Positions 58,680 through 59,798 of a DNA stretch of 64,000 nt are shown one piece after another. The notes beneath the pieces were generated by a model that searched no databases, was not told the DNA's origin, and was given only the letters and a program-made list of their open reading frames with translations. The number at the start of each line of letters is the position of its first letter. Position 1 is the first letter of the stretch. The position numbers were made by a program, and so were the translations under genes. Source of the stretch: Pecten maximus (taxonomy: Eukaryota); assembly GCF_902652985.1 (NCBI RefSeq), contig NC_047025.1, positions 28,520,001-28,584,000 on the forward strand. Reading direction: 5' to 3'.

Positions 58680-59798
58680 CATACCGCTGTTTCTTCCTTC
58701 TATAGGGGCTCGTCAGTGATGTTAGGGACATCATACCGCTGTTTCTCCCTTCTAGGGACTCGTCAGTGATGTTAGGGACATAATACAGCTGTTTCTTCCT
58801 TCTAGGAGCTCGTTAGTGATGATAAGGACATCATACAGCTGTTTCTTCCTTCTAGGGACTCGTCAGTGATGTTAGGGACATCATACCGCTGTTTCTTTCT
58901 TCTAGGAGCTCGTCAATGATGCTTAAGACATCATATATGTTTGGGGGGGGGGGGGGGGGGTGTTTTGTTTTGTTTTGTTTTTTTCCTTCTTGGGGCTCGA
59001 CACTGATGATAAGAACATCATACAGCTGTTTTCTCCTTCTACGGGCTCGTCAGTGATGATAAGGACATCATACCGCCGGTTTTTTTTCTTCTAGGGGCTC
59101 GTCAGTGATGCTATAGACATCATACAGTTTGTTTGTTTTGGTTTTTGGTTTTTTTTTTCGAGGGGTTTTCTTCTTTTCTGGGGCTCGTCAGTGATGTTAG
59201 GGACATCATACCGCTGTTTCCTCCTTCTAGGAGCTCATCAGTAATGCAATAGCGATCGAAAAGGTTGGGGGTGTTTTGGGGGGGGGGGGGGGGGGGGGGT
59301 TGTTTTTTTCTTGGGGCTCGTCAGTGATGATAAGGACATCATACAGCTGTTTCTTCCTTCTAGAGGCTCCTCAGTAAAATCTGCATTTATCACATGATTT
59401 GTTTTCCTTGATTCTCGGCTGGAGACATCATACAGCTGTTTCGTCTGCTAAGACTCGTCAGTGATGATTAGGACATCATACAGCTGTTTCGACCTTCGAG
59501 CACTTTTCAGTCATGCTAGGTGCATCATTTAGCTGATTCGTGATTGCTAGGGGCATCACACAGCTACTTTGTCCTTCTATGACTCGCCAGTGATGCTAGG
59601 GACATCACATAGCTGTTTTGTCCTTCTATGACTCGTCAGTGATGCTAAAGACATCATATATCTTTTTAGTCCTTCTAGGGCTCGTCAGTGATGCTAAAGA
59701 CATCATATATCTTTTTGGTCCTTCTACGACTCATCGGTGATGCTAAGGACATCATACAGCTGTTTCGTCCTTCTAGGTCTCGTCAGTGATGCTACGGA
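58680..59798 (-). repeat. Tandem array 2 of a 49-50-bp hammerhead-ribozyme unit (~20 copies, with poly-G/T interruptions)
   Basis: Same family and orientation as array 1. Period 50 at 58680-58930 and 49 at 59550-59790. Confidence 0.9.
59432..59487 (-). ncRNA. Intact hammerhead ribozyme (type III fold; overlapping type I fold at 59426-59466)
   Basis: ACAGCUGU A^UGAUG UCCUAAU CAUCA CUGACGA GUCU UAGC AGAC GAA ACAGCUGU. All core nucleotides present. Stem I 5 bp, stem II 4 bp, stem III 8 bp, all Watson-Crick. Confidence 0.85.

What the first reader, a model, noticed from the sequence alone, without database searches (positions are those of the whole stretch)
58680..59798. A minisatellite whose 49-nt unit is entirely a hammerhead ribozyme
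Seen: the - strand unit is UGAUG UCCCUAG CAUCA CUGACGA GUCC UAGAA GGAC GAA ACAGCUGU A (49 nt). Every base belongs to the hammerhead: C3-U-G-A-N-G-A9 core, stem II, G12-A-A, stem III, a GUA cleavage triplet and stem I, with no cargo sequence. Established: tandem type I hammerheads occur in newt satellite 2, schistosome Sm-alpha, Penelope-like elements and metazoan non-LTR retrozymes, whose monomers I recall as much longer (over 100 nt). Inference: a transcript would self-process into ~49-nt monomers with 5'-OH and 2',3'-cyclic phosphate ends that could circularise. Head-to-tail arrays are what rolling-circle reverse transcription of such a circle would leave. This could be an unusually minimal retrozyme-like element. 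I cannot check whether it has already been described.
Basis: partly seen in the sequence, partly recalled or inferred. Interest (0 to 1): 0.92.

Follow-up and report, generated by a model that had tools for sequence, protein, structure and literature searches.

The report
Hammerhead ribozyme minisatellite in king scallop
This is a largely decayed copy of a tandem repeat, found throughout the scallop genome, whose 49-base unit is a complete hammerhead self-cleaving ribozyme; it sits inside an older short mobile element and is an unusually compact variant of known ribozyme satellites, not a new kind of system.

Summary
On the minus strand, 58680-59799 is an interrupted array of about 19 units of 49-50 nt, and the family consensus is a complete hammerhead with no spare bases.

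The genome matches Pecten maximus by assembly size and scaffold count. It holds at least 2,429 near-consensus units on all chromosomes. Consensus-like copies elsewhere pass Rfam's Hammerhead_1 threshold; the window copies do not. Only one unit here (59431-59478) keeps every invariant residue.

- Arrays lie between conserved, non-repeated arms with fixed junctions.
- The same arms occur around a single hammerhead, for example at window 21302-21552.
- Whole arrays are fixed for catalytically dead variants.
- The catalytic core is no better conserved than the loops.

One puzzle remains. Units are about 10% diverged from their consensus, but their own arms are 25-38% diverged, so arrays look younger than their carriers.

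Contigs from RNA-seq libraries contain the units, but they cannot show RNA ends, strand or circles.

A 2026 preprint already lists retrozyme units as short as 51 bp. First-stage readers of this scan also noted the same satellite on other pieces of this genome (s1-784558, s1-785260).

Verdict: a new variant of a known kind, of moderate interest.

The parts
59800..59939 (-). 5' arm of the carrier element: non-repeated, and joined to a first unit that is truncated at its 5' end.
   Evidence: An nhmmer profile built from 12 arms of other loci hits 59939-59799 (E=7e-12). The junction with the first unit lies at the same position as in at least 9 other loci.
58680..59799 (-). Hammerhead minisatellite (array B): 19 units or fragments of 49-50 nt.
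   Evidence: Tandem Repeats Finder, the motif count and the unit-by-unit alignment with core status.
59431..59486 (-). Best-preserved hammerhead. The palindrome of the preceding unit plus unit 59431-59478 fold as a type III hammerhead. Cleavage is predicted between 59479 and 59478.
   Evidence: RF00008 at 41.6 bits. The minimum-free-energy fold is the three-way junction with an 8-bp helix III. All invariant residues are present.
59749..59792 (-). First unit, read in the type I register. The core is complete, with an A.A mismatch in helix II.
   Evidence: RF00163 at 21.8 bits, below the threshold of 34; unit table.
59560..59754 (-). Four units that have lost G12 (changed to C, U or A); two of them also have a damaged CUGANGA box.
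   Evidence: Unit table.
58682..58933 (-). Five-unit sub-block with a 50-nt period. Three units keep the full core and two carry a change in the CUGANGA box. All five have G10.1 opposite A11.1 instead of the G-C pair.
   Evidence: Unit table. RF00008 gives 30.1 and 22.5 bits, with mismatches marked at that pair. The block folds no better than shuffled sequence (z=0.19).
59278..59299 (-). Run of 22 C, one of several C- and A-rich stretches that replace unit 3' halves and interrupt the array. Another is at 58943-58960.
   Evidence: Read directly from the sequence.
58594..58679 (-). 3' arm of the carrier element. Similarity to other copies stops after the ...ACAATCC end.
   Evidence: An nhmmer profile from 14 other arms hits 58673-58594 (E=1.6e-13); alignment of 19 downstream flanks.
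48489..49098 (-). Second array of the same family (12.5 units), with no recognisable arms.
   Evidence: Tandem Repeats Finder. Rfam gives 30.0 bits (type III) and 27.3 bits (type I). The unit table shows one fully intact unit, 48996-49044.
21302..21552 (+). Single-unit copy of the carrier: 5' arm, one decayed hammerhead (21430-21471), then the 3' arm.
   Evidence: nhmmer hits for both arms lie about one unit apart. The sequence was read directly. A genome search with it finds at least 10 contiguous copies of the same layout.

Best explanation
The locus is an old, mostly inactivated member of a family found throughout the Pecten maximus genome.

The founder is a short non-coding dispersed element of about 270 nt. 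It consists of a 5' arm, one canonical metazoan type I hammerhead (helix I 6 bp, helix II 4 bp, helix III an 8-nt palindrome) and a 3' arm. In many copies the 49-nt stretch holding the hammerhead has been amplified in tandem, so helix I becomes closed by a 5-nt loop and the repeat unit equals the ribozyme.

In a transcript of such an array, the palindrome at the end of one unit pairs with the palindrome at the end of the next. This yields a self-contained type III hammerhead that should cut after GUA. [quoted passage not shown] This step is inferred from structure, not shown.

Array growth and turnover do not depend on catalysis and are most simply DNA-level events such as unequal exchange, segmental duplication or ectopic exchange.

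In the window copy, one or two of the 19 units could still cleave.
For: - The array and its motif are real.
- The family is genome-wide: 2,429 hits to a 45-nt pattern with up to 2 mismatches, against 0 for the reversed control. Arrays are 0.6-3.5 kb and lie on all chromosomes. Extrapolation gives at least 6,500 units.
- Consensus-like copies pass the RF00163 gathering score and nearly reach that of RF00008.
- Minimum-free-energy folds give the type III junction; a consensus-like trimer has z=-4.67.
- The arms are conserved and the junctions fixed.
- Single-unit elements exist in the window and elsewhere.
- Inactivating variants are fixed within arrays: C3 to A in 40 of 57 units of one array, and G12 changes in 12-15 of about 20 units in three others.
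- Segmental duplication peaks appear at lags of 11, 12 and 15 units.
- Core divergence is 8.2% against 6.3-8.1% for the loops (p=0.41).
- Contigs from RNA-seq libraries carry the units and the junction between the last unit and the 3' arm.
Against: - No cleavage assay was run, and no RNA ends or circles could be seen: only contigs were available, and DNA carry-over is not excluded.
- Covariation is weak.
- Units are 2.4-3.7 times less diverged than the arms of the same elements, with no gradient towards the array edges. In-place DNA amplification alone does not explain this.
- The transposon class of the carrier is unresolved. Only one clean 14-bp target duplication was found.
Confidence: 0.62

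Rival explanations
1. Minimal retrozyme cycle. Array transcripts self-cleave. The 49-nt monomers, or 98-nt dimers joined through the palindrome, are circularised and then reverse-transcribed by rolling circle. The multimeric cDNA re-enters the genome, preferentially by homology at resident single-hammerhead elements.
For: - Units are far younger than their arms and the boundary between them is sharp.
- Thousands of units are at least 95% identical over 45 nt, whereas no arm reaches that level: the best non-self hit was 91% over 53 nt.
- About a third of the arrays show no arms.
- RNA-library contigs hold the units.
- The retrozyme model is established for metazoan type I hammerheads (PMC7229834).
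Against: - Identity within arrays (0.87) is barely above identity between arrays (0.83), which is not what fresh rolling-circle products would show.
- Arrays fixed for dead cores exist.
- No target duplications flank the arrays that lack arms.
- No circular or 49-nt RNA has been seen.
- Exchange through DNA circles or ectopic conversion predicts the same age gap.
Confidence: 0.18
2. Pure fossil. The hammerhead was active only in the ancestral single-unit element. Today's arrays are inert satellite DNA inside a pearl/CvA-like tandem-repeat-bearing element, with no RNA-level activity anywhere in the genome.
For: - Divergence is uniform across core, stems and loops.
- 60% of units have a damaged core.
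- The layout matches that described for CvA/pearl and DTC84: a 5' module of about 150 bp, a truncated first repeat, a tandem core and a 3' module (PMC5874043 and PMC3879986).
Against: - 24% of 926 units still meet every structural criterion, and many pass Rfam's curated type I threshold.
- The units are present in RNA libraries.
- In stems I and II, transitions that create G.U pairs outnumber those that create A.C mismatches by about 2 to 1; in unpaired positions the same classes of transition run the other way. This is suggestive only (array-level p=0.14).
Confidence: 0.15
3. Host-selected function. The arrays would be kept because they serve the scallop, for example as transcript-destabilising or small-RNA-producing modules.
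For: Units are less diverged than the flanking arms.
Against: - Selection for catalysis would protect the core more than the loops, and it does not.
- Many arrays, including this one, are dead.
- Copy number and the dispersed, variable arrays look like selfish DNA.
Confidence: 0.05

Closest known systems
Newt satellite 2, Schistosoma Sm-alpha and cave-cricket hammerhead satellites (Rfam Hammerhead_1, RF00163)
   Same: The ribozyme is the same type. [quoted passage not shown] It is also tandemly repeated in animal DNA.
   Different: Those monomers are 150-500 nt and carry other sequence. Here the repeat is the ribozyme alone (49 nt), and the neighbouring unit supplies helix III within the same molecule, giving a type III topology.
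Metazoan non-LTR retrozymes (Cervera and de la Pena 2020, PMC7229834; Li et al. 2026 preprint)
   Same: Tandem type I hammerheads, non-coding, thousands of copies, present in a bivalve (the mussel), and found in RNA libraries.
   Different: The described units are about 150-400 nt, although the 2026 preprint lists a range of 51-972 bp. In retrozymes the whole monomer repeats. Here only the hammerhead segment of a roughly 270-nt element repeats, between unique arms. Circular RNA has not been shown.
Minimal hammerheads of Penelope-like elements (Cervera and de la Pena 2014, PMC4209133)
   Same: Palindromic helix III, dependence on a second copy, and association with mobile DNA.
   Different: Those variants have a long helix II (7-8 bp), a short helix I and a bulged base. 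This one has the canonical helices. No reverse transcriptase or endonuclease ORF lies next to any of the 50 loci.
Bivalve tandem-repeat-bearing MITE-like elements (pearl/CvA, DTC84; PMC3879986, PMC5874043)
   Same: Modular layout: a 5' module of about 150 bp, a first repeat truncated at its 5' end, a tandem core of variable length, and a 3' module. These elements are dispersed and transcribed.
   Different: Their core repeats are about 160 bp and number up to about 6, with an adjacent microsatellite and an AA target site. Here the core is 49 nt and reaches more than 60 copies, with no microsatellite and no consistent AA. No ribozyme has been reported in those elements.
Type III hammerheads of viroids and plant retrozymes (RF00008)
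   Same: In the tandem context the unit matches the type III model end to end (41.6-46.6 bits), with closed helices I and II and an open 7-8-bp helix III.
   Different: Scores stay just under the gathering score of 48.5. The sequence lineage is that of animal type I hammerheads, and the type III topology is a by-product of the tandem duplication.

Membership tests
Hammerhead ribozyme (Rfam clan CL00010) | Invariant core C3-U-G-A-N-G-A9 and G12-A-A14, the A15.1-U16.1 pair, and a position 17 that is not G | tested here: met
   Met by the family consensus and by window unit 59431-59478. It is not met by most of the other 18 units of this array. Across the sample, 374 of 926 units keep the core.
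Hammerhead ribozyme (Rfam clan CL00010) | Score at or above Rfam's curated gathering threshold | tested here: inconclusive
   Window copies fall below the thresholds: RF00008 41.6 against 48.5, and RF00163 27.3 against 34. Consensus-like copies in other loci pass RF00163 with 35-36.6 bits.
Hammerhead ribozyme (Rfam clan CL00010) | Three helices supported by covariation | tested here: inconclusive
   89.9% of cells are paired against 89.4% in shuffles. The covariation score is 0.117 against 0.111, reached by 24 of 500 shuffles. The family is too young and uniform to be informative.
Hammerhead ribozyme (Rfam clan CL00010) | Mg-dependent self-cleavage at position 17 | not testable with these tools
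   This needs in vitro transcription.
Metazoan non-LTR retrozyme | Tandem repeats in which each unit carries a type I hammerhead | tested here: met
Metazoan non-LTR retrozyme | The whole element is the repeat unit (about 150-400 nt with non-ribozyme sequence), with no unique flanking modules | tested here: not met
   The unit is 49 nt with no cargo. Unique conserved arms flank the arrays. A 51-bp lower bound has been reported in a preprint.
Metazoan non-LTR retrozyme | Abundant circular RNA of monomer size | not testable with these tools
   Only assembled contigs of RNA libraries were available. They show presence, not ends or circles.
Metazoan non-LTR retrozyme | Sequence kinship with the terminal repeats of a Penelope-like element in the same genome | not tested
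None of the 50 loci held such an ORF.
pearl/CvA-like tandem-repeat-bearing MITE | 5' module, truncated first repeat, tandem core and 3' module | tested here: met
   compared with the descriptions read.
pearl/CvA-like tandem-repeat-bearing MITE | Inverted repeats of 10-20 bp (subterminal on the left, terminal on the right), an adjacent microsatellite, and an AA target site | tested here: not met
   Only a 7-nt motif (ATTGTAC / GTACAAT) is shared, and it is itself part of a palindrome. There is no microsatellite. The bases after the 3' end vary.
SINE-like retroposon (Sm-alpha type) | Internal pol III A and B boxes, and target site duplications | tested here: not met
   The 12 arms have no conserved A or B box. 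One 14-bp duplication was found (locus L037), and nothing convincing elsewhere.

The most novel reading that the evidence does not exclude
The 49-nt unit is the smallest self-sufficient retrozyme. Its RNA cuts itself out and closes into circles of 49 or 98 nt. These are copied by rolling-circle reverse transcription, and the multimeric cDNA re-enters the genome by homology at old single-hammerhead elements. That would explain why arrays are about 10% diverged while the arms around them are 25-38% diverged.
Probability: 0.15. Interest if true: 0.85.

Novelty: new variant of a known kind. Interest (0 to 1): 0.45.

Why it matters
If the intact units cleave, this family yields the shortest natural hammerhead repeat I could find described for an invertebrate: an RNA that is all ribozyme.

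It also shows how a dimer-dependent type I hammerhead becomes a self-contained type III hammerhead simply through tandem duplication.

The age gap between units and arms offers a concrete, testable handle on how ribozyme satellites spread: through RNA circles, DNA circles or ectopic exchange. The scallop has a chromosome-level assembly and accessible tissues, which makes those tests practical.

The window copy itself is a decayed example and has little value on its own.

Tried and rejected
- **Target site duplications.** I searched around armed elements and around arrays without arms. Only one was convincing (14 bp, locus L037). The other matches lay inside units or were AT-rich chance matches.
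- **Higher-order repeats.** Only weak peaks appeared in three arrays. This is not strong enough to prove unequal crossing-over on its own.
- **Covariation.** The tool's statistics barely exceed the shuffles. Compensatory double changes exceed expectation only at one pair of the palindrome, and at one helix II pair where 25 of 31 cases come from a single array.
- **G.U-forming versus A.C-forming transitions in stems.** The ratio is 2 to 1 per unit but not significant when counted per array (p=0.14).
- **Open reading frames.** None was found consistently next to arrays.
- **Pol III boxes.** None were found in the 5' arm.
- **Inverted-repeat reading of the arm ends.** The shared motif is part of a palindrome, so direct and inverted relations cannot be told apart.
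- **Arm coordinates.** The 5'-arm and 3'-arm hit lists share no locus, because only 30-40 candidates are scored. This says nothing either way.
- **Literature.** No paper links hammerheads with Pecten, scallops or bivalve satellite DNA. The Lunse 2017 paper and one further PMC id, recalled from memory for the de la Pena 2010 paper, were not held.
- **More loci.** Further genome sequence could not be fetched, so the census rests on 50 loci plus the window.
- **Two stray 13-mer matches.** The one at 12261 is chance. The one at 17771 is a further decayed solo unit.

Full report
**What is there.** On the minus strand of 58680-59799, Tandem Repeats Finder reports three blocks with periods of 49-52 nt. 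A 13-mer spanning helix I and the CUGACGA box occurs 20 times in the window against 0.02 expected. Aligning each unit to the family consensus gives 19 units or fragments. The window contains no N.

After the cleavage site the unit runs in this order:
- helix I (UGAUGU / ACAUCA) closed by a 5-nt loop
- CUGACGA
- helix II (GUCC / GGAC) with a 5-nt loop
- GAA
- the palindrome ACAGCUGU
- A17

**Rfam.** Nothing in the window reaches a gathering score except a tRNA. In E-value mode the best match is Hammerhead_3 at 59433-59486, at 41.6 bits (threshold 48.5; E=1.2e-5 over the whole window). Weaker type III and type I matches cover other units.

The array is badly worn. Only unit 59431-59478 keeps every invariant residue. 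Four units between 59560 and 59754 have lost G12. Five units at 58682-58933 have A at position 11.1. C- and A-rich runs replace several unit halves. The 58680-58935 block folds no better than shuffled sequence (z=0.19).

**Genome and family.** The assembly has 918,306,378 bases in 3,983 contigs. These are exactly the figures published for Pecten maximus (PMC7191990). The window is contig 11, 28,520,001-28,584,000.

A second array lies at 48489-49098. A 45-nt consensus pattern with up to two mismatches hits 2,429 places, and its reversed control hits none. Together with the whole-array search, matches fall on all 19 chromosome-scale contigs. Arrays are 0.6-3.5 kb long. Extrapolating from my sample gives at least 6,500 units.

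In four loci with consensus-like units, Hammerhead_1 scores 35-36.6 bits, above its threshold of 34. Hammerhead_3 reaches 46.6 bits. The motif shares its core, helix II and an 8-nt palindromic helix III with the Rfam type I consensus. It is therefore the classical animal hammerhead, as in newt satellite 2 and Sm-alpha, not a new ribozyme.

**Topology.** A single unit plus the palindrome of the preceding unit folds, at minimum free energy, into a three-way junction with a 7-8-bp helix III. A consensus-like trimer does the same, with z=-4.67. Classical type I hammerheads have a weak helix III and act as dimers (PMC4209133). Here the neighbouring unit supplies that strand within the same molecule. 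Cleavage itself is inferred, not shown.

**The arrays are not naked.** Flanks of about 40 arrays align on both sides.
- The 5' arm is 150-165 nt and ends at a first unit truncated at the same base in at least 9 loci.
- The 3' arm is about 90-100 nt and starts after the first five bases of a would-be next unit. Similarity between copies stops at a shared end.
- Profile searches place these arms in the window at 59939-59800 and 58673-58594.

The same profiles also found a copy at 21302-21552 on the plus strand, in which the two arms enclose exactly one decayed hammerhead. Searching the genome with that copy returns at least ten hits that run contiguously from arm through unit to arm, at 68-81% identity.

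The basic element is therefore a dispersed, non-coding repeat of about 270 nt with one type I hammerhead. The minisatellite is an internal amplification of its 49-nt ribozyme segment. The loop that closes helix I in the array corresponds to the last bases of the 5' arm.

No reverse transcriptase or endonuclease ORF lies nearby. There are no pol III boxes. Only one clean 14-bp target duplication was found. The layout resembles bivalve pearl/CvA and DTC84 elements, but their microsatellite, inverted repeats and AA target site are not met. The class of the carrier stays open.

**Is the ribozyme under selection?** I examined 926 in-register units from 44 arrays.
- 40% keep the core and 24% meet all structural criteria.
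- Divergence from consensus is 8.2% in the core, 6.3% and 8.1% in the two loops, and 8-11% in the stems. The core is not protected (p=0.41).
- Several arrays are fixed for lethal changes: C3 to A in 40 of 57 units; G12 to C in 15 of 22; G12 to A in 14 of 19 and in 12 of 22; and others.
- Array spread therefore does not need catalysis.
- Covariation is uninformative.
- A two-to-one excess of G.U-forming over A.C-forming transitions in stems I and II is suggestive but not significant per array.

**An unexplained age gap.** In the same elements, 3' arms are 24.7% diverged from their consensus (pairwise identity 62%) and 5' arms 38%. The units are 10.4% diverged (pairwise identity 81%). The first unit beside the 5' arm stands at 13.8% and all the others at 8-11%, so the change at the junction is abrupt.

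Each array's own consensus differs from the family consensus at no more than 3 of 49 positions in most arrays. Homogenisation inside an array cannot produce this. Selection for catalysis would not be uniform across core and loops. The simplest reading is that units are younger than their arms, or are exchanged among loci, with the junctions kept by homology.

However, DNA circles or ectopic conversion would give the same pattern. Identity within arrays (0.87) is barely above identity between arrays (0.83), which is not what fresh rolling-circle products would show.

**RNA.** Twenty public runs hold words of the repeat. I laid four runs on a nine-unit element.
- One RNA-seq run gave 189 contigs carrying the units.
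- Two runs guessed to be RNA gave 966 and 551 contigs. In these two, loose ends run into the 3' arm.
- A run from a second, coded organism gave 29,849 contigs, so a relative carries the family in abundance.

Contigs cannot show ends, strand or circles, and DNA carry-over is not excluded.

**Literature.** Metazoan retrozyme units are given as about 150-400 nt (PMC7229834 and PMC7761336). A 2026 preprint reports consensus lengths of 51-972 bp in vertebrates and ties retrozymes to Penelope-like elements. I found no paper on hammerheads in scallops.

**Verdict.** The locus is a decayed member of a large family. The kind of system (hammerhead satellite or retrozyme-like repeat) is known. The new aspects are the cargo-free 49-nt unit, its origin inside a single-hammerhead carrier, and the gap in age between units and arms.

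Noticed in passing
window 63163-63234 (-): A tRNA-His gene (anticodon GTG), scoring 62.3 bits in Rfam and confirmed by ARAGORN.
   Followed up: yes
window 43122-45702: A large unrelated minisatellite: 43-nt unit, about 60 copies, 89% matches.
   Followed up: no
window 56120-56854, 52422-52921, 15083-15363: Three more tandem arrays: 37 nt x 21 copies, 21 nt x 24 copies, and 92 nt x 3.1 copies at 99% identity. The window is rich in repeats.
   Followed up: no
window 59278-59299 and 58943-58960 (-): Runs of 22 and 18 C, flanked by A-rich stretches, replace the 3' halves of units inside the array. They could be homopolymer expansion or an assembly artefact of long reads.
   Followed up: no
window 17760-17810 (+): A further solo, internally deleted hammerhead remnant on the opposite strand. 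It was found through the 13-mer scan and not recognised by the arm profiles.
   Followed up: partly
L004:458-1163: A cluster of long hairpin repeats built on a GGTGATATCAC-type palindrome lies between a 5' arm and its array. It gives microRNA-like Rfam matches far below threshold. It looks like a different repeat inserted into the element.
   Followed up: no
L049:3030-4425: Two arrays of the family abut head to head on opposite strands.
   Followed up: no
L050 and L013, downstream of their arrays: The hammerhead arrays run directly into other, unrelated tandem repeats with units of roughly 36-40 nt.
   Followed up: no
L048:1120-4634 (-): One element appears split. The 5' arm and a 1.8-kb array are separated by about 1.1 kb of foreign sequence from a short array and the 3' arm. 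This suggests an insertion into the array.
   Followed up: no
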